64,000 nucleotides of DNA, from IMG/VR virus record IMGVR_UViG_3300023179_004149, positions 1 to 64,000 of that record; one strand, 5' to 3'. This document shows, piece after piece, positions 1-30,654 of this stretch. The notes beneath the pieces were generated by a model. That model did not search any database and was not told the origin of the DNA. It was given only the letters and a program-made list of their open reading frames with translations. Position 1 is the stretch's first letter, and every line of letters starts with the position of its first letter. The position numbers and the translations under genes were made by a program.

Positions 1-308
1 CCGATCAGTTTGCACTGAATCTTGATTTTGGCATAATTTGGTAGATCAACCATACGATAGTGCGTCATCCAGGGAAACATATCACTGGACATACGGTAAA
101 CCATAATACCATTATATAGGTTATACTTCAAAATACGCAAACAATCCGTGAGATTTTGTTGTATCAGTTCAGATACATAAGGTAACCCCTTACTTTCAAA
201 GGTTTTTTTAACCATACCACGATTAACGGTAACGTGATTTTGTTTGGTAACACCCTCGTTTATACCCATTGATATACAGCAATACCCAATATTCTGACTC
301 ATTTGCAT
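1..308 (-). CDS. uvsE: UV damage repair endonuclease (UvsE/UvdE family), 5' part only; runs off the window start
   Basis: Manual translation gives MQMSQNIGYCCISMG...NRGMVKKTFESKGLPYVSELIQQNLTDCLRILKYN...YRMSSDMFPW, matching the UvdE N-terminal motifs. Not in the ORF track. Confidence 0.85.
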   Translation of the reverse strand, partial: MQMSQNIGYCCISMGINEGVTKQNHVTVNRGMVKKTFESKGLPYVSELIQQNLTDCLRILKYNLYNGIMVYRMSSDMFPWMTHYRMVDLPNYAKIKIQCKLI

Positions 309-385
309 TTTTTGACAAAAGTAGATAAAATAACGACACCAACAAAATTTTTTTCGGGTTTTGACTATTTATAATAAAAAAGACT

Positions 386-856
386 ATGGAAAACATTAAA
401 TTCTCACAAGGGGCTGTTGATTTAATAGCGAAATTTGAAGGTTTTAGGTCAAAACCTTATCTTGACTCGGTAAATATCCCAACTATTGGGTACGGTACAA
501 CGTTTTATGAAAACGGTAAAAAAGTAACAATGAACGATGCTCCGATCACAGAACCAAGAGCTAAAGAAATCTTGTTAAATTATTTAAATAATCATATGTT
601 ACCTGAATTTAAAAAAAGTATTAAGGTTCAACTTGAACAACATCAGATTGATGCTCTCGCTTGTTTGGTTTATAATATAGGTAACGGCGCTTTCAAAAAT
701 TCAAGCGTGTTAAAAAACATAAATGAAAACATTAAATCGGGTGAGATGTTCGAGAAAAACTGGAAAGCCTGGAATAAAGGGGGTGGTAAAGTTCTTCAAG
801 GTTTAGTGAACCGTAGAGAAGGCGAGTATAAGTATTTTACAAAAGGTGTTTTATAA
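386..856 (+). CDS. Phage lysozyme/endolysin (GH24)
   Basis: FEG-x8-D-x5-TIGYG catalytic motif, YNIG, and C-terminal GLVNRREGE. Confidence 0.92.
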   Translation: MENIKFSQGAVDLIAKFEGFRSKPYLDSVNIPTIGYGTTFYENGKKVTMNDAPITEPRAKEILLNYLNNHMLPEFKKSIKVQLEQHQIDALACLVYNIGNGAFKNSSVLKNINENIKSGEMFEKNWKAWNKGGGKVLQGLVNRREGEYKYFTKGVL

Positions 857-1410: not shown

Positions 1411-2579
1411 TGTGTTTCCCCTTTTAAATATTTAATAATCTCAGCCTTATTGTTGCTGATTTCGTCACTATAGATGGCGCCGATGATACTCATCAAGGCT
1501 TTACCCACTTCCTGACCCTTATAACCCATTTCCATCAAATCGTTACCGTTAACAGTAAGTTTAGAGATTGATGCTGGATATTTGTTGGTCATGAAGTCAT
1601 CCATAACATCATTTAGGTGACTTTGCACAAACTTACTAAAAAATATTGAGGGGGCCAACTTATTTAGTTGAAAATATATCCATCTTTGTTTTATTACATC
1701 ATCGCCTGGTAAATTAGCGTACAAATAAGACAAAGCCCCTATTTCTTTCGTAACCTTATCTTCGCCCTTCATTATATTCTTAAAGTACTGGTCTGGTTGG
1801 TCAACGATACCTTTAATCAGCCAGAATATAAATTCACTCATCCTGGTAACGTAATCAAAGGGCTCAAAATCACCCACAAACCCAGTACCAAAAATACCTC
1901 TGAATAAACCACTCTTATCCAACAAAACAGCACCAACATGTGGGTTACCTTTGTTTACTATCTTATCAAATTCGATCAAAATCCTTTCTTTTGATATTTC
2001 AGATATTTTATCTGCGTTTCTTTCGATCAATTCAAACGTTCTTGGTTCAATTGTAAAATCGAACCTTGAAGCTTGCGCCACACATCTTAACATTCGTAAT
2101 GGATCATCGATGAATGATCGAGTTGATGTTGCCGATATAATTTTATTTTTGATATCAGCTAATCCATTGAACGGGTCAATTAATTTATTATTAATCATAT
2201 CATAAGCCATTGAGTTTAATTTTGTATCACGCCGCTCCAGATCCCTTTCAATAGGTAGTGTGTGGTCAACATTAATATCAAACCCTTTATAACCACCAAG
2301 ACCATTAACGCTTTCTTTTCTTGGTAAGGCAATATCAATTTCTTCACTATTAACACTATCGGTAAATTTTATAATACCAAAAGATTCACCAACAACATCC
2401 ACCTTTCCGTATTTAGATAATATATTTTTTAATTCATTTACCTCAATGCCTGATATAACAATATCTAAATCTTTAGACGGTTTATTCAGATAAAAATCTC
2501 TAACCGCACCCCCAACGATATATATTTTACCTCCCCTATTTTGTATAGCATCGGTAAAAGGTAATTTAATGTTCACCAT
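1407..2579 (-). CDS. cca: tRNA nucleotidyltransferase (CCA-adding enzyme, class II)
   Basis: VGGAVRD, DLD, RRD..NSMAY, DPFNG..D, DDPLRMLR, ERI..EFDK. Confidence 0.9.
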   Translation of the reverse strand: MVNIKLPFTDAIQNRGGKIYIVGGAVRDFYLNKPSKDLDIVISGIEVNELKNILSKYGKVDVVGESFGIIKFTDSVNSEEIDIALPRKESVNGLGGYKGFDINVDHTLPIERDLERRDTKLNSMAYDMINNKLIDPFNGLADIKNKIISATSTRSFIDDPLRMLRCVAQASRFDFTIEPRTFELIERNADKISEISKERILIEFDKIVNKGNPHVGAVLLDKSGLFRGIFGTGFVGDFEPFDYVTRMSEFIFWLIKGIVDQPDQYFKNIMKGEDKVTKEIGALSYLYANLPGDDVIKQRWIYFQLNKLAPSIFFSKFVQSHLNDVMDDFMTNKYPASISKLTVNGNDLMEMGYKGQEVGKALMSIIGAIYSDEISNNKAEIIKYLKGETQ

Positions 2580-4628: not shown

Positions 4629-5525
4629 TTAAATACCATCTTCAATTATTTTTTCAATATTTTCATAATCAATATATGAAATACGTATTAATTTAGGTGA
4701 GCCAGGTTGTGAACAAAACTCATTTTTTATTTTATCCTTCAACATCATTTCTTCATAATTTTTACTATATATTGTGTTCGGTATAAAATGTTGTTTACCA
4801 TCATATTCTATGCAAATATTCTGTTCAATTAAGAAGAAATCAAATGGTAATGGTTTTTTATATCTACATTCGAGGAATCTTTTTTGTTGAGTGTAGATTA
4901 TTGAATTATTATCAAGAAATTTTTTGATTTTTTCTTCCCCTTTAGATAATTTACAATTAGGGCATCCGATACCTTTAACATGATCATTGGGCCGCTGTTC
5001 AAACGGGCCATGATCTTTACATATAATTTTTATTTTAGTCTTAGTGTTTATATAAACAACATCAGAATAATCATATTTACTACCATGTTTCAATACGGCT
5101 TTATTAATAAATGATTCGTTATTATCTAATTTGGATTTTTTAATGGTTAATAACCCACAATCGGGGCAACCACAACCATTTATATGAACGGCTGGCTTTT
5201 GAATGAAAATGCCATGAATAGGGCACTTTATAATAACGGGTGTTCTATTATTAACATAATTACAGTCGGTATAAGTATATTTATTCTGGTGTATGATGTT
5301 AGCCTTATCAATGAATGATTGTGTTGTTAATTTGACACCACCCTTACATGTCGGACAACCAGTTTTTAATCTAATGTGATTATCTGGGGTTACAAAAAAT
5401 GAACCATGTTCTGAGCACACCAACTCAACCTTAGTTCTTGCATTTTTGTAATCAATTTGCGAATAATTGTATTTATTACCATGTACATTATTTGCTTGAT
5501 GAATGAATTTTTCGGATTTGTTCAT
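4629..5525 (-). mobile_element. Free-standing homing-endonuclease-like gene (three Zn-ribbon repeats plus PD-(D/E)XK/Vsr-like nuclease domain)
   Basis: Repeated C..HG.F...P..H..G.GCP.C; C-terminal PFDFFL...ICIEYDGKQH; likely start MNKSEKF after a TATTTATA motif. Confidence 0.8.
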
Positions 5526-5574
5526 AAAACCATTTACTATAAATAGTATGGGAAATCGTAAAATCAGCACTTGG

Positions 5575-5912: not shown

Positions 5913-6530
5913 TTACTCTGTAAATAGCTTGCTGTTGAGATTATGAATCTTCTTAAAGAAACGATGTAATCTTTCAATCTCGGCTACATTAACTTCACCA
6001 TCGTTTTCGATAACAACATCACAATACATCATCTTCTCATCTTGCGGCATCTGGTTCTTTATCTTTGCCATGATTTGCGTTTCATCGTGGCCCAAGTCCC
6101 TGGCTCTGATCCTGGCCATTCTAACCTCAGAACCAGCATTAACACCAATCATGAAATCAACCAGGTCATCCATATTATATTCAAAGAATATGGCTGATTC
6201 AACAAGGACATATGATTTGTACCAGTACTTATCGTAAAAAGCAAGAATGTCATTCTTTAGATAAGGATCAAAGATTAAAGCGAGATCAACTTTTTTCACC
6301 TTATCATTGAATATAACATCAGCAACATATTTGCGATTGTATTCATTGTTTTCATCAAACACATTCGGCCCCAGAAACTCAATAAGTTTTACCCTCAGCT
6401 CTTTGTTTTCTTTGATGAGAGTTTTTAACCTATCATCCATGACATATGTCGGAACATCCAGTTTTTCAAACTCTTTCAATATGGTTGTTTTACCAACCCC
6501 CATGTTTCCCGTAACGCCAATCTTAATCAT
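5913..6530 (-). CDS. coaE: Dephospho-CoA kinase
   Basis: IGVTGNMGVGKTT P-loop, ESAIFFE, R...RD, Q......K..CD.VIENDG. Confidence 0.9.
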   Translation of the reverse strand: MIKIGVTGNMGVGKTTILKEFEKLDVPTYVMDDRLKTLIKENKELRVKLIEFLGPNVFDENNEYNRKYVADVIFNDKVKKVDLALIFDPYLKNDILAFYDKYWYKSYVLVESAIFFEYNMDDLVDFMIGVNAGSEVRMARIRARDLGHDETQIMAKIKNQMPQDEKMMYCDVVIENDGEVNVAEIERLHRFFKKIHNLNSKLFTE

Positions 6531-7339: not shown

Positions 7340-7368
7340 CTTTTTGTTTTTTACTGGTTAAATAATAA

Positions 7369-7560
7369 AATTAACACCCGTAGCCTCGATTCTGTTCTAT
7401 CCTACCATCTATCTTTGCCTTAACCCATCCTCATAGGGAAACCGACACCCTCGGATTGTTTAAGTTGCAGCTTCTTTGGTATAACGATTGTTTAGATCTC
7501 CCAAATTAGGTTTTGCTGTCGAGAACTTCCTCTGTTTCCAGCGGTAGGTCGATGTTAATT
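7369..7560 (-). ncRNA. rnpB: Miniature RNase P RNA (about 192 nt)
   Basis: P1 AAUUAACAUC/GGUGUUAAUU; P2 CCUACC/GGUAGG; P3 CUG-GAAA-CAG; P4 GAGGAAGUUCUCGA with ACAGAAUCGAGGCUA; P5 CAGC/GCUG followed by CAA; P15 CUUAA/UUAAG with GGU; AGAUAGAUG before the P2 3' strand. Confidence 0.85.
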
Positions 7561-7649
7561 TTAGTAAAATCCAAATGATTGGTAAGTATTGGCGGAGCCC
7601 GTTGTATTACAAGTCGCTATTCTATTACCTTTCAAAATTAAATTAAGTG

Positions 7650-7707: not shown

Positions 7708-8382
7708 ATGACACCACTTTATACACAAATTGAGTTTGATTCAGCCAAATCGCAGACCAAGTTACCTTGTAAATGCGAATATTGTACCAATACGTTCCAT
7801 AAACCAAAAAAAGAAATAGTCTACGAATTAAAAAATAATCGTGGTGCTATTCGTTTTTGTTCAATACGATGTTGTAATCATAATAGCAAGGGAATTAAAC
7901 AATTAGTATTATGTGATCAATGCAATACGCAATTTGAAAAACACACTTCTCAAATTAAAAAATCTAAGAACAATTTTTGTTCGAGATCATGTTCTGTTAC
8001 ATACAATAATAAACATAAAACCACTGGTAATAGGCGTTCTAAGCTCGAAATTTGGCTCGAAGAGCAACTAACAACACTTTATCCTAATCTTATTATAGAT
8101 TATAATAAAAAGGATGCCATTGGCTCTGAACTTGATATTTATATCCCATCACTTAACCTGGCTTTTGAATTGAATGGGATTTTTCATTATGAACCCATAT
8201 ACGGTTTAGATAAACTAAACCAAATTCAAAACAATGATAATAATAAATTCCAATACTGTTTAAAATATGGAATATCTTTATGCATTATTGATACATCAGA
8301 TCAAAAATATTTTAAAAAGATAACATCTAAAAAATATTTAGATATTATTATTGATATTATAAATCAAAGAACTTCTTATTAA
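7708..8382 (+). mobile_element. Free-standing endonuclease gene (Zn-finger repeats plus PD-(D/E)XK-like domain)
   Basis: CEYC/FCS.RC, CDQC/FCSRSC; ELDIYIPSLNLAFELNGIFHY; antisense to the tRNA cluster. Confidence 0.75.
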
Positions 8383-10976: not shown

Positions 10977-11311
10977 TTAATCGAATATATCAAGTTTTTG
11001 ACCCTCGTAAGTGGTTATGCTGGATCCATCAACAAAGTATATCTTGGTTTCACTCCGATCCCTGGTAGCTGGCCACAAAATCTATTCGGTGCTGGTATTG
11101 ATTCGAGGTAAATATTTCTGTTCAGTGGAAATCTCATGTACAGTTTTTTTTATTAGGTTTTTAATTTTTGGTCTAGTTCTCAAATCATCATAATAATCCT
11201 GATAAGTCTTAGCTTCCGTGGATTTACCTTCATCTTTACAGTTTTTTATTAACTGTATAAGCCGATCTAAGTTAGACATAATATTGTATTCGTGTATGTT
11301 GTGTTCACAAC

Positions 11312-13000: not shown

Positions 13001-13072
13001 GGGTCAAGCACGGTATCGATCCGAGTTCTCCTGATTCACAGTCAGGCACATCACCTTAATGCTTCAAGACCC
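13001..13072 (-). tRNA. tRNA-His(GTG)
   Basis: CCTGA-CTGTGAA-TCAGG; G-1:C73 possible; A54-type T loop. Confidence 0.85.
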
Positions 13073-13315: not shown

Positions 13316-13387
13316 TGCGCCTTGCTGGTATCGATCCAGCCCCCGCAGCTTAAAAGGCTGCTGCCTACACCTGTTTGCCAAAAGCGC
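13316..13387 (-). tRNA. tRNA-Lys(TTT)
   Basis: GCAGC-CTTTTAA-GCTGC. Confidence 0.88.
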
Positions 13388-15871: not shown

Positions 15872-16062
15872 CTTTCTCGTTAAAATACTGTTTTAATTCG
15901 TCAATGGTACAGTCCAATCGATATGATATCATATCTTTGGACATGGATAAAAGATAATTTTTAACATCTGTTAAAAAAGATATCATCTCTTCTTTCCACT
16001 CTTCAGTACCGACAATATGTTTTGTCTTCATCTTTATAGTTTTATATCTATAAATATCAGAG

Positions 16063-16135
16063 TGATTCCAGTGGGGATCGAACCCACACCTAATTGATTT
16101 AGAGTCAACTATACTGCCGATTATACTATGGAACC
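16063..16135 (-). tRNA. Amber suppressor tRNA (CTA)
   Basis: GTTGA-CTCTAAA-TCAAT anticodon arm; complete cloverleaf, short variable loop, A73. Confidence 0.85.
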
Positions 16136-19567: not shown

Positions 19568-19624
19568 TAGTCCCCGAAGGATTCGAACCCTCACCAAGTA
19601 TGCTTACCGTTACACCAGAGAACC
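19568..19624 (-). ncRNA. Anticodon-armless tRNA-like RNA (57 nt)
   Basis: Acceptor, D arm and T arm intact; D and T arms joined by only ACTTGGT. Confidence 0.65.
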
Positions 19625-29021: not shown

Positions 29022-29093
29022 AGGACACACTCAGAACCGACCTGAGAACTCATGCTTACAAGGCAAGTATTTTTCCAGCTAAACTATGCGTCC
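29022..29093 (-). tRNA. tRNA-Thr(TGT), atypical T loop
   Basis: CTTGC-CTTGTAA-GCATG; CTCAG-GTCGGTT-CTGAG. Confidence 0.7.
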
Positions 29094-29514: not shown

Positions 29515-29599
29515 TGGCGGTCTCGATGGGATTCGAACCCATGATCTTCGCCGTGACGCGTTACAGGGCGACAGGGACGACCAACTCCCCTACAAGACC
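29515..29599 (-). tRNA. tRNA-Asp-like gene with a 7-nt insertion in the anticodon loop
   Basis: TCGCC-CTGTAACGCGTCAC-GGCGA; G73; encoded CCA. Confidence 0.75.
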
Positions 29600-30479: not shown

Positions 30480-30550
30480 CGGGGCTGCCTGGGAACGATC
30501 CAAGTTCTGCAAGTTAACAGCTTGCTGCATCACCTTAATGCTTCAGCCCC
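30480..30550 (-). tRNA. tRNA-Asn(GTT)
   Basis: GCAAG-CTGTTAA-CTTGC; G73. Confidence 0.87.
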
Positions 30551-30581: not shown

Positions 30582-30654
30582 TGGTGCCCCTCGGTTTCGA
30601 TCCGACCCCCCAAGATTTTCAGTCTTGTGCTTCCACCAGGTTAGCTTGGGCACC
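30582..30654 (-). tRNA. tRNA-Phe(GAA), divergent copy
   Basis: CAAGA-CTGAAAA-TCTTG. Confidence 0.82.

What the first reader, a model, noticed from the sequence alone, without database searches (positions are those of the whole stretch)
7369..7560. Phage-encoded miniature RNase P RNA with a collapsed specificity domain
All catalytic-domain landmarks can be placed (P1, P2, a GAAA-capped P3, P4 with bulged U, P5, P15 with GGU, and the conserved 3' junction). Only about 43 nt lie between the P5 strands, where bacterial RNAs carry P7-P14, and there is no P18. At about 192 nt it is roughly half the size of typical bacterial RNase P RNA. No rnpA protein gene is visible in the window. Inference: a ribozyme tuned to process the atypical phage tRNAs, borrowing the host protein.
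Basis: partly seen in the sequence, partly recalled or inferred. Interest (0 to 1): 0.8.

Follow-up and report, generated by a model that had tools for sequence, protein, structure and literature searches.

The report
Phage-encoded miniature RNase P RNA
A 320-kb freshwater phage, like over a hundred other viral contigs, carries inside its tRNA gene cluster a half-size version of the RNase P ribozyme that trims tRNA precursors; no such phage gene turned up in Rfam 15 or the papers I could search.

Summary
On the minus strand at window 7366-7563 lies a 198-nt RNA with the full topology of a bacterial type-A RNase P catalytic domain: P1, P2, GNRA-capped P3, the P4 pseudoknot with a bulged U, P5, P15 with the GGU loop, and J2/4 ACAGAA. 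P18 is absent, and only 43 nt replace P7-P14. It belongs to a family of more than 100 viral contigs. Across 63 distinct members, 96% of proposed pairs form (29-39% in slid controls) and 40 of 48 pairs show compensatory changes. All 675 neighbouring tRNA genes lie on the same strand, often within a few bases of the RNA. Every core segment has the same length as in E. coli M1 RNA. Rfam's RNase P models miss the window copy, but the archaeal model matches three family members at exactly their coordinates (E down to 4e-11), below the curated cut-off. Neither this phage nor five other near-complete genomes encode RnpA. Catalysis, use of the host protein and any tuning to odd tRNAs remain untested. 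I found no prior description. I class it as a new variant of a known kind, of high interest.

The parts
7366..7563 (-).
   Evidence: R2 covariance model: 190 bits, E 1e-55, full length. It is the only copy in the 320,934-bp genome.
7551..7563 (-). P1 5' strand; pairs with 7366-7378
   Evidence: All 10 P1 pairs tested show compensatory changes, and 91.5% of cells pair across 63 members.
7366..7378 (-). P1 3' strand
   Evidence: helix 1.
7542..7548 (-). P2 5' strand (CCUACCG); pairs with 7401-7407; ends in an invariant G.U
   Evidence: 98.4% of cells pair and 6 of 7 pairs are compensatory. The G.U is present in 63/63 members. E. coli has the same 7 bp with the same terminal G19.U335.
7401..7407 (-). 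P2 3' strand (UGGUAGG)
7532..7541 (-). P3: 3-bp stem with a GAAA tetraloop (CUG-GAAA-CAG)
   Evidence: The stem covaries among members (CUG/CAG, CAG/CUG, CGG/CCG) under GNRA loops. P3 is much longer in L002, L007, L024 and L028.
7519..7531 (-). J3/4 (AGGA) and the P4 5' strand (AGU-U-CUCGA), equivalent to CR-I. The bulged U is at 7524.
   Evidence: AGGA and U40 are invariant in 63/63. P4 pairs in 100% of cells and 4 pairs are compensatory. The 3 bp-U-5 bp geometry equals that of E. coli A66-G74 with U69.
7382..7389 (-). P4 3' strand (UCGAGGCU), part of CR-V
   Evidence: It has the same 8-nt length as E. coli 353-360.
7390..7400 (-). J2/4, 11 nt, ending in ACAGAA
   Evidence: It has the same 11-nt length as E. 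coli 342-352, and the last 6 nt are identical. ACAGAA is present in all 63 members, but it was fixed by both search patterns.
7515..7518 (-). P5 5' strand (CAGC); pairs with 7468-7471
   Evidence: 100% of cells pair and all 4 pairs are compensatory.
7468..7471 (-). P5 3' strand (GCUG)
7509..7513 (-). P6 pseudoknot, 5' strand (AAACC); pairs with 7439-7443
   Evidence: Per-sequence test: mean best-helix score 5.38, against 3.28 +/- 0.12 when the loops are permuted among members (maximum 3.63 in 500 permutations). At least 17 different complementary sequence pairs occur.
7439..7443 (-). P6 pseudoknot, 3' strand (GGUUU), in the P17 loop
7475..7505 (-). Reduced specificity domain. A P7-like helix (7501-7505 with 7475-7479) encloses GAG, a small hairpin (7486-7498, GAU-CUAAACA-AUC) and GUUAUA.
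   Evidence: The P7-like helix pairs in 95.8% of cells and all 4 pairs are compensatory. GAG is present in 50/63 members. The hairpin stem covaries and is a site of expansion: the segment between the P5 strands measures 41-127 nt.
7465..7467 (-). J5/15 (CAA), equivalent to E. coli C247 A248 A249
   Evidence: A98 and A99 are invariant in 63/63, and no search pattern fixed them. The correspondence with E. coli is shown.
7419..7464 (-). P15-P16-P17 arm. P15 is 7462-7464 with 7419-7421. The internal loop has AAACA (7457-7461) opposite GGGUU (7422-7426), with the GGU at 7423-7425. P16 is 7453-7456 with 7427-7430. P17 is 7448-7450 with 7436-7438.
   Evidence: P15, P16 and P17 pair in 93-97% of cells and have compensatory pairs. 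GGU is present in all 63 members, but G140 and U141 were fixed by the second search pattern. The 5-nt/5-nt loop matches E. coli AAAUA/GGGUA.
7408..7418 (-). Linker from P15 to P2 (GCAA-AGAUAGA). This corresponds to E. coli J15/18 plus J18/2 with the P18 hairpin precisely absent.
   Evidence: E. coli has GC-UU-[P18]-U-AGAUGAA at this place. nhmmer's best hit for this module in the rnpB locus falls on the homologous site (E = 0.013).

Best explanation
This is a phage-encoded RNase P RNA. It descends from the bacterial type-A ribozyme and is reduced to the catalytic domain plus a 43-nt stump of the specificity domain.

Shown:
- It folds into the RNase P core: P1-P2-P3, the P4 and P6 pseudoknots, P5, and P15-P16-P17 with the GGU loop.
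- That core covaries across a family of more than 100 viral contigs.
- The gene lies in the phage's tRNA array on the tRNA strand.

Inferred:
- It is transcribed with, or next to, the tRNAs. In many relatives its own ends would be released by tRNA 3' and 5' processing.
- It binds pre-tRNA acceptor ends through J5/15 (the A248 equivalent) and, where a CCA is present, through the L15 GGU.
- It cleaves the 5' leader at the P4 active site.
- It probably works with the host's RnpA protein, because the phages encode none.
- With no T-loop-reading S-domain and no P18, substrate choice would rest on the acceptor stem and 3' end.
- The benefit would be extra tRNA 5'-maturation capacity, or capacity independent of the host, for a phage that brings 31 tRNAs and its own CCA-adding enzyme.
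For: 1. Structure and covariation. On 63 distinct members, 96.2% of cells pair, against 29-39% with slid partners. 40 of 48 pairs show changes on both sides. The covariation score is 0.742, against 0.118 or less in controls. P4 and P5 pair in 100% of cells (also on the MAFFT seed alignment). P6 is supported by the permutation test.

2. Correspondence with real M1 RNA. Segment lengths are identical for P2 (7 bp, with the same terminal G.U), J3/4+P4 (14 nt), P5 (4 bp), both sides of L15 (5 and 5 nt), J18/2 (8 nt), J2/4 (11 nt) and the P4 3' strand (8 nt). The strings GAGGAA, GCAA, AAA-A/GGGU, AGAU and ACAGAA are shared.

3. Residues that matter for catalysis or substrate contact are invariant in 63/63 although no search pattern fixed them: J3/4 AGGA, the bulged U, A98/A99, A105 and G139 of the L15 GGU. 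G140 and U141 are also present in all members, but the second search pattern fixed them.

4. Curated-model support. RF00373 aligns members L016, L060 and L088 over their exact coordinates (E = 3.9e-11, 4.2e-8 and 1.2e-4). It skips its own S-domain positions. The same three are members by R2, as is the window copy (190 bits).

5. Context. All 675 tRNAs in the loci are on the RNA's strand and none on the other. 26 of 63 members have a tRNA within 10 nt. In the window, the PF01743 CCA-adding-family gene is about 5 kb downstream on the same strand.

6. Biochemical plausibility. An isolated E. coli C-domain cleaves substrates. Its efficiency depends on a P6-type interaction, and P18 adds nothing once the S-domain is gone (PMC5839562). 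This matches what the phage RNA keeps and what it has lost.

7. Possible expression. An aquatic metatranscriptome holds a stand-alone 180-nt contig covering 7385-7560 at about 93% identity. One end falls at the predicted 5' end.
Against: - No activity data exist.
- The window copy and its nearest relatives get no hit from any Rfam RNase P model even at E <= 10. The three hits on other members are below the curated gathering score (28-49 bits against 84).
- The phage model does not significantly find E. coli rnpB.
- P4 departs from the bacterial consensus: A67-U359 becomes G-C, and G68-C358 becomes U.G or C-G.
- Only 7 of 28 tRNAs encode the CCA that the GGU would pair with.
- The metatranscriptome evidence is one low-depth contig from a relative, and DNA carry-over is not excluded.
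- In the window the RNA is 880 nt from the nearest tRNA, with an opposite-strand ORF between them, and I found no convincing promoter.
Confidence: 0.78

Rival explanations
1. It is an RNase P-derived decoy or regulator. The RNA keeps the fold but does not cleave. It titrates the host's RnpA protein, or pre-tRNA 3' ends, to skew tRNA maturation toward the phage or to shut down host translation.
For: No RnpA gene occurs in any of the six near-complete genomes checked, so the RNA must either work alone or engage the host protein. P4 departs from the bacterial consensus. The only earlier viral RNase P-like RNA, from camelpox virus, was inactive in vitro (PMC3001073).
Against: A protein sponge would not need the bulged U, J2/4 ACAGAA, the A248 equivalent or the GGU to be kept across 63 divergent sequences. 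It would also not need the P6 pseudoknot that supports C-domain catalysis (PMC5839562). Placement inside the phage's own tRNA arrays argues for helping tRNA maturation rather than blocking it.
Confidence: 0.1
2. It is an active ribozyme with a changed main substrate. Without an S-domain, it would cleave something other than ordinary pre-tRNAs, for example tmRNA precursors, tRNA-like elements, phage or host mRNAs, or only the junctions of its own array in cis.
For: Loss of the T-loop-reading domain relaxes substrate recognition. This is established for C-domain constructs (PMC5839562). Phage tmRNA genes lie beside the RNA in L088 and L075. L047 and L062 carry a tRNA/tmRNA-like domain inside the RNA's own S-domain hairpin. 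Bacterial RNase P is known to process tmRNA and other non-tRNA substrates (PMC4919922, section 5.4).
Against: The dominant and universal neighbours are ordinary tRNAs with canonical T-loops. Nothing in the sequence points to a guide function.
Confidence: 0.1
3. It is a chance resemblance, or a decaying fragment of a captured host rnpB gene with no function.
For: The fold is no more stable than shuffled sequence (z = -0.25). No Rfam model hits the window copy.
Against: More than 100 viral contigs carry it. Sequences range from 39 to 63% GC, yet 96% of pairs form with abundant compensatory change. The position and strand relative to tRNAs are invariant.
Confidence: 0.01

Closest known systems
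Bacterial type-A RNase P RNA (Rfam RF00010; E. coli M1 RNA, rnpB)
   Same: The order and topology of the catalytic domain are the same: P1, P2, P3, P4 pseudoknot with a bulged U, P5, P6 pseudoknot, and P15-P16-P17 with a 5/5-nt internal loop carrying GGU. J5/15 GCAA, J18/2 AGAU-AAU and J2/4 ...ACAGAA are shared. Every core segment has the same length as in M1 RNA.
   Different: The phage RNA is 198 nt, against the typical 340-420 nt (PMC4919922). P7-P14 are reduced to a P7-like helix plus one small hairpin (43 nt). P18 is absent. P3 is cut to 3 bp plus a tetraloop. CR-I reads GAGGAAGUUC/GAGGAAGCUC instead of GAGGAAAGUCC. The gene is carried by phages and has no partner rnpA gene. RF00010 does not detect it.
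Pyrobaculum minimal RNase P RNA ('type T' or 'type P'; Rfam RF02357; Lai et al. 2010, as cited in PMC4919922)
   Same: It is a natural RNase P RNA that keeps the catalytic domain and lacks nearly the whole specificity domain. Its size is similar, about 200 nt.
   Different: That RNA is archaeal, chromosomal, the cell's only RNase P RNA, and works with archaeal proteins. The phage RNA is bacterial type-A in design (P6, P16/P17, L15 GGU loop) and keeps a conserved P7-like stump. RF02357 gives no hit.
Archaeal type-A RNase P RNA (Rfam RF00373)
   Same: It lacks P18 and P13/P14 (PMC4919922). It is the only curated model that recognises family members (L016, E = 3.9e-11; L060; L088). The alignment runs end to end through P1-P5, P15/16, J2/4 and P4.
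   Different: The scores of 28-49 bits are below the gathering score of 84. The S-domain part of the model is skipped. The window copy itself is not hit. The hosts are phages found in bacterial-type environments.
Engineered C-domain-only constructs (E. coli 'CP RPR', Mao et al. 2018, PMC5839562)
   Same: They have the same parts list: a type-A C-domain without the S-domain, active in trans, dependent on a P6-type pairing and indifferent to P18.
   Different: Those are laboratory deletions with reduced efficiency. The phage RNAs are natural, conserved, and keep a small structured S-domain remnant.
Orthopoxvirus (camelpox) RNase P-like RNA (discussed in PMC3001073)
   Same: It is a virus-encoded RNA proposed to resemble RNase P RNA.
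   Different: It comes from a eukaryotic virus, has only partial secondary-structure similarity, and showed no pre-tRNA cleavage in vitro. The phage family has the complete, covarying catalytic core and sits in tRNA arrays.

Membership tests
RNase P RNA, catalytic (C) domain, bacterial type A | P4 long-range pseudoknot with a single bulged U, formed by CR-I (GAGGAAAGUCC-like) and CR-V (ACAGAA-N-...GGCUUA-like) | tested here: met
   3 bp, bulged U40, 5 bp, the same geometry as E. coli 66-74/353-360. P4 pairs in 100% of cells across 63 members, and 4 pairs are compensatory. Two base pairs next to the bulge differ in sequence from the consensus.
RNase P RNA, catalytic (C) domain, bacterial type A | The P1-P2-P3 stack in the canonical strand order (P1, P2, P3, P4 5', ..., P2 3', P4 3', P1 3') | tested here: met
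   P1, P2 and P3 pair in 91.5%, 98.4% and 98.4% of cells and have many compensatory pairs. P2 is 7 bp ending in G.U, as in E. coli.
RNase P RNA, catalytic (C) domain, bacterial type A | J5/15 adenosines (E. coli A248/A249) directly after P5 | tested here: met
   GCAA directly follows P5, as in E. coli 246-249. A98 and A99 are invariant in 63/63. The role of A248 is described in PMC10465520.
RNase P RNA, catalytic (C) domain, bacterial type A | P15/P16 internal loop with GGU on its 3' side (the 3'-RCCA binding site) | tested here: met
   AAACA opposite GGGUU, against E. coli AAAUA opposite GGGUA. GGU is present in 63/63 members, partly because the second pattern fixed it. P15 and P16 covary.
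RNase P RNA, catalytic (C) domain, bacterial type A | P6 pseudoknot between the strand 3' of P5 and the P17 loop | tested here: met
   5-8 contiguous pairs in most members, using at least 17 different sequences. Observed mean helix score 5.38, against 3.28 +/- 0.12 after permutation.
Full-length bacterial RNase P RNA (RF00010/RF00011) | Specificity domain P7-P14 with the conserved CR-II/CR-III modules that read the tRNA T- and D-loops | tested here: not met
   Only 43 nt lie between the P5 strands (family range 41-127 nt). They form a P7-like helix, GAG, one small hairpin and GUU-NNN-A.
Full-length bacterial RNase P RNA (RF00010/RF00011) | P18 hairpin between P15 and P2 | tested here: not met
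   An 11-nt linker (GCAA-AGAUAGA) occupies the place where E. coli has GC-UU-[P18]-U-AGAUGAA.
Full-length bacterial RNase P RNA (RF00010/RF00011) | Score at or above the Rfam gathering threshold | tested here: not met
   No RNase P family hit on the window at gathering level or at E <= 10. RF00010 finds nothing at the locus in the own genome.
RNase P clan (Rfam CL00002) | Statistically significant covariance-model match over the full element | tested here: inconclusive
   RF00373 matches members L016 (E = 3.9e-11), L060 (4.2e-8) and L088 (1.2e-4) at exactly the family coordinates. It does not match the window copy or its nearest relatives. The link to the window copy runs through model R2 (190 bits).
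Pyrobaculum-type minimal RNase P RNA (RF02357) | Match to the type-T covariance model | tested here: not met
   No match at E <= 10 in the own genome.
RNase P (enzyme) | Endonucleolytic removal of the pre-tRNA 5' leader, leaving a 5'-phosphate at +1 | not testable with these tools
   This needs an in-vitro cleavage assay or genetic complementation.
Bacterial RNase P holoenzyme | Partner protein RnpA (PF00825) | tested here: not met
   The protein is not encoded in this genome or in five other genomes of 358-494 kb that are 95-100% complete. Whether the host's RnpA is used cannot be tested here.

The most novel reading that the evidence does not exclude
These phages carry a working, self-sufficient tRNA 5'-maturation ribozyme. 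It would be a natural bacterial-type RNase P made of the catalytic domain only. It would act without the T-loop-reading domain and perhaps without any phage protein, making maturation of the phage's own tRNA set independent of host RNase P, for example during host shut-off or under tRNA-directed defence. Some relatives carry 85-150-nt inserts in the S-domain hairpin, including a tRNA/tmRNA-like domain. That raises the possibility of RNase P RNAs that hold a substrate-like module in cis, or that are cut into two base-paired pieces.
Probability: 0.3. Interest if true: 0.95.

Novelty: new variant of a known kind. Interest (0 to 1): 0.86.

Why it matters
RNase P RNA is one of the few universal ribozymes, and it has been treated as a cellular and organellar gene.

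- If the family is active, viruses would join the list of RNase P RNA carriers.
- It would provide more than 100 natural sequences of a bacterial-type enzyme with only the catalytic domain. Such forms have so far been known only from laboratory deletions and from one archaeal lineage.
- That natural experiment would show which parts of the ribozyme are truly needed. P6 and the L15 GGU are kept, while P18 and P8-P14 are lost.
- It would help explain how phages with large tRNA arrays mature their tRNAs.
- At about 200 nt, it would be a compact scaffold for structural and engineering work.
- It exposes a gap in annotation: current Rfam models miss these genes, so they go unannotated in phage genomes.

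Tried and rejected
- Thermodynamic test: the MFE is no better than shuffled sequence on either strand. This test is uninformative for this RNA.
- blastn of the locus against 50,697 GenBank phage records found no match.
- My first structure string nested P2 with P4 wrongly, because P4 is a pseudoknot. Model R1 and the helix 2 and 6 counts are artefacts and should be ignored. I corrected this.
- My first 3'-module pattern had a mis-counted spacer and returned only 3 loci. I corrected it.
- Reciprocal search of the E. coli rnpB locus with the phage model R2 gave only a 3.8-bit, E = 0.31 match on the 3' end of rnpB. nhmmer with the 3' module gave E = 0.013 at the correct site, and the 5' module gave nothing. 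These sequence-only and global-CM tests are too weak to bridge about 180 nt of extra domains.
- I tested the idea that the 'half' hits (L047, L054, L059, L062) contain an ordinary tRNA gene inside the S-domain hairpin. ARAGORN calls none there. Rfam gives only sub-threshold tmRNA matches in L062. This is left open.
- The promoter and terminator scan around the gene found 1 promoter-like site against 1.8 expected, and that site overlaps P1. It is uninformative.
- Eight literature searches found no description of a phage-encoded RNase P RNA. The library lacks most subscription journals, so prior publication cannot be excluded.
Full report
WHAT IS THERE. The window is the first 64 kb of a 320,934-bp IMG/VR virus record judged complete, from lake or freshwater metagenomes. 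It holds 31 tRNA genes, all on the minus strand, between 8444 and 30834.

The finding lies on that same strand. Read as window:7366-7563:- (198 nt; positions below count in this frame, and window coordinate = 7564 - position), the sequence lays out as follows:
- P1: 1-13/186-198.
- P2: 16-22/157-163.
- P3: CUG-GAAA-CAG, 23-32.
- J3/4: AGGA.
- P4: 37-39 and 41-45 with 175-182, with a bulged U.
- P5: 46-49/93-96.
- 43 nt between the P5 strands.
- J5/15: CAA.
- A P15-P16-P17 arm, 100-145.
- An 11-nt linker.
- J2/4: ends in ACAGAA.

IS IT MORE THAN CHANCE? Folding energy alone says nothing (z = -0.25). Comparative data decide the question.
- A split 21-base pattern found 34 viral loci, of which 33 are plainly the same RNA.
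- A second pattern, built only from the 3' module so that CR-I is free, found 99 stretches.
- A covariance model (R2) built from 19 non-redundant members scores the window copy at 190 bits. It finds a hit in each of the 54 newly fetched loci.
- On the 63 distinct full-length members (A3), 96.2% of cells form standard pairs, against 29-39% when partners are slid by 1-3 columns. 40 of 48 pairs show changes on both sides. The covariation score is 0.742, against 0.118 or less in the controls. P4 and P5 pair in every sequence.
- The MAFFT-only seed alignment, which was not fitted to any structure, gives the same picture: 92.6% against 30-42%.
- MAFFT and the model do not align P6 well, so I tested it per sequence. 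The best helix between the strand after P5 and the P17 loop averages 5.38, against 3.28 +/- 0.12 when the loops are permuted among members. At least 17 different complementary pairs of sequences occur.

One caveat applies. GAGGAAGTTC, ACAGAAT and GCTA were fixed by the first pattern. GGT, GC, AGA, AT, ACAGAA and GGCT were fixed by the second. Invariance at those positions is therefore partly built in. The inner P4 pairs, P1, P2, P3, P5, P6, P15-P17, J3/4, the bulged U, A98/A99 and A105 were free in at least one of the two searches.

IS IT RNase P? I took the real E. coli rnpB sequence from NC_000913.3 and compared it segment by segment. The lengths are identical for:
- P2: 7 bp, ending in the same G.U (E. 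coli G19.U335).
- GAGGAA plus the P4 5' strand: 14 nt.
- P5: 4 bp.
- GCAA after P5, which contains A248/A249.
- The two sides of the L15 loop: AAAUA/GGGUA against AAACA/GGGUU.
- J18/2: 8 nt.
- J2/4: 11 nt, with ACAGAA identical.
- The P4 3' strand: 8 nt, and the following A.

P18 is excised cleanly: GC-UU-[P18]-U-AGAUGAA becomes GCAA-AGAUAGA.

Members that read GAGGAAGCUC pair C39 with G180, where the window has U39.G180. So the bulged base is U40, and P4 has the E. coli geometry of 3 bp, U, 5 bp. The E. coli pairs A67-U359 and G68-C358 are replaced by G-C and U.G (or C-G).

Formal tests gave mixed results.
- Rfam's RNase P models give nothing on the window at the gathering level or at E <= 10.
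- R2 does not significantly find E. coli rnpB.
- nhmmer with the 3' module has its best hit in the rnpB locus on the homologous site, but only at E = 0.013.
- Decisive support came from GC-richer members. RF00373 (archaeal RNase P, clan CL00002) matches L016:3344-3548 (48.9 bits, E = 3.9e-11), L060:1055-1314 (E = 4.2e-8) and L088:2169-2377 (E = 1.2e-4). These are exactly the family coordinates.
- The L016 alignment runs through P1/P2, P3, CR-I, P5, GCAA, P15/16, the J18/2-like strand, ACAGAA, the P4 3' strand and P1, while skipping the model's S-domain.
- These scores are below the curated cut-off of 84 bits. The window's nearest relatives are not hit.

Membership in the RNase P clan for the window copy therefore rests on three things: the chain window -> R2 family -> RF00373, the structural correspondence with M1 RNA, and the covariation.

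THE REDUCED S-DOMAIN. Between the P5 strands, after the P6 strand, lies a P7-like helix (all 4 pairs compensatory). It encloses GAG (50/63 members), a small hairpin with a 3-5-bp covarying stem and often a tetraloop, and GUU-NNN-A. The window's GAU-CUAAACA-AUC has the same loop as L006's GGC-CUAAACA-GCC, with a compensated stem.

This hairpin is an expansion site.
- L043's catalytic domain is almost identical to the window's, and it has an insert of about 85 nt there.
- L074, L078 and L052 reach about 310 nt.
- L047 and L062 carry an insert of roughly 135-155 nt. It begins GGGGCAU and ends with a T-arm and ...CCACCA.

No CR-II/CR-III-like modules are present, so the T-loop-reading function of a normal S-domain is not expected. 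The conserved stump may still dock somewhere, but that is inference.

CONTEXT. In the 63 loci, ARAGORN finds 675 tRNA genes, every one on the RNA's strand.
- 57 loci contain tRNAs.
- 26 have a tRNA within 10 nt of one end of the RNA, and 7 have one at both ends. In L021, for example, the neighbouring tRNAs end at 11057 and start at 11262 around an RNA at 11059-11260.
- For these members, the RNA's ends would be produced by the same 3' and 5' processing events that release the tRNAs. This is inference.
- In the window, the RNA is the last element of the array region, 880 nt from tRNA-Glu. An opposite-strand ORF with no Pfam match lies between them (7708-8382).
- A PF01743 (CCA-adding-enzyme family) gene lies at 2136-2525 on the same strand. 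This fits the finding that only 7 of 28 tRNAs encode CCA.
- No RnpA-family protein is encoded in this genome or in five other near-complete genomes of 358-494 kb that carry the RNA.
- In one genome per 185,579 prokaryotic species, the 3'-module pattern found nine places. Five or six are real members, all on short MAG contigs and none in an isolate genome. The family therefore looks viral.

EXPRESSION. Only DNA runs hold the locus as such. One aquatic metatranscriptome contains a single 180-nt contig covering 7385-7560, with 11 substitutions and 2 indels (a relative). It ends at the predicted 5' end and includes none of the flanks. This is suggestive only.

HOW IT MOST LIKELY WORKS. Shown: the fold, its conservation, its kinship with RNase P, and its linkage to tRNA arrays.

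Inferred: it is an active RNase P RNA that removes 5' leaders from the phage's pre-tRNAs.
- It would use the P4 core, the A248-equivalent contact to position -1 (PMC10465520) and the GGU/CCA pairing. The last point is established knowledge for type-A RNAs.
- It would most probably act with the host's RnpA.
- Laboratory work on the E. coli C-domain shows this parts list is sufficient. The isolated C-domain is active, depends on a P6-type pairing and is indifferent to P18 (PMC5839562).

I put this explanation at about 0.78. The rivals are a non-catalytic decoy for RnpA (about 0.1), an active ribozyme with a different main substrate (about 0.1), and chance or a pseudogene (about 0.01). The decoy idea is disfavoured because residues needed for catalysis and substrate contact, not only for protein binding, are invariant.

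Four tRNAs have A54, one has G54 and one is a 57-nt truncated form, but the large majority are canonical.

COMPARISON AND NOVELTY.
- The closest family by design is bacterial type-A RNase P RNA. The RNA meets all the C-domain criteria and fails the S-domain, P18 and Rfam-threshold criteria.
- The closest in degree of reduction is the Pyrobaculum minimal RNA (PMC4919922). That RNA is archaeal and is not matched.
- The only viral precedent I found is the camelpox RNase P-like RNA, which was inactive in vitro (PMC3001073).
- Rfam 15 has no family for this RNA, and eight full-text searches found no description. The library does not cover most subscription journals.

I class it as a new variant of a known kind, with high interest.

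Noticed in passing
L047:338-690 (-), L062:~215-679 (+); also L054 and L059: Some family members carry an insert of roughly 135-155 nt in the small S-domain hairpin. In L047 and L062 it starts GGGGCAU and ends with a T-arm plus ...CCACCA, giving a 7-bp acceptor-like stem with G3.U. It looks like a tRNA/tmRNA-like domain embedded in the RNase P RNA. ARAGORN calls nothing there, and Rfam gives only sub-threshold tmRNA hits (21.7 and 14 bits, against a gathering score of 47).
   Followed up: partly
L043:1614-1895 (+); L074, L078, L052: L043's catalytic domain is almost identical to the window's, and it has an insert of about 85 nt in the same hairpin (282 nt in total). L074, L078 and L052 reach 308-323 nt. 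The hairpin is a hot spot for expansion. The inserts draw no Rfam hit.
   Followed up: partly
L088:1020-1390 (+) and L075:1261-1644 (-): Phage-encoded tmRNA genes (119 and 97 bits, above the gathering score) lie within about 1-1.5 kb of the miniature RNase P RNA, on the same strand. tmRNA precursors are known RNase P substrates.
   Followed up: no
window 16062-16135 (-); also L006:8568-8641 and L018:5497-5648: tRNAs with anticodon CUA, which ARAGORN labels 'Pyl', are amber-suppressor tRNAs. They may indicate TAG reassignment or read-through in these phages.
   Followed up: no
window 29515-29599 (-): A tRNA that ARAGORN reads with a four-base anticodon (tgta) in an enlarged loop. Rfam scores it at 50.9 bits.
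   Followed up: no
window 19568-19624 (-): A 57-nt tRNA-like hit (Rfam 32.9 bits) sits between two tRNA-Gln/Leu genes, and ARAGORN does not call it. It has a canonical T-arm but is too short to hold all the arms.
   Followed up: partly
window 30582-30654, 30480-30550, 13316-13387, 13001-13071 (A54) and 29022-29093 (G54), all (-): Five tRNAs have A or G in place of U at T-loop position 54, and they score lower against the Rfam tRNA model. Only 7 of the 28 tRNA hits encode a 3' CCA.
   Followed up: partly
window 2136-2525 (-), within a 394-aa open frame: A protein of the CCA-adding-enzyme / poly(A) polymerase family (PF01743, 85 bits) lies on the tRNA strand, about 5 kb from the RNase P RNA. A CoaE-like dephospho-CoA kinase lies at 5913-6530 (-).
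   Followed up: partly
window 4629-5570 (-) and 7708-8382 (+): Cys-rich ORFs are scattered among the tRNA genes. The first has a treble-clef zinc-finger domain (DUF4379), and the second has no Pfam match. They look like homing-endonuclease-type genes, and 7708-8382 separates the RNase P RNA from the tRNA array.
   Followed up: no
L002:7539-7803 (+): This member has a 64-nt P3 in place of the usual 10 nt. It lies flush between tRNA-Asn (ends at 7538) and tRNA-Ala (starts at 7805).
   Followed up: no
run X1, record 2: The lake sample that holds this phage also holds a 149-nt contig from a second, different family member. Its P16/P17 region resembles that of L035.
   Followed up: no
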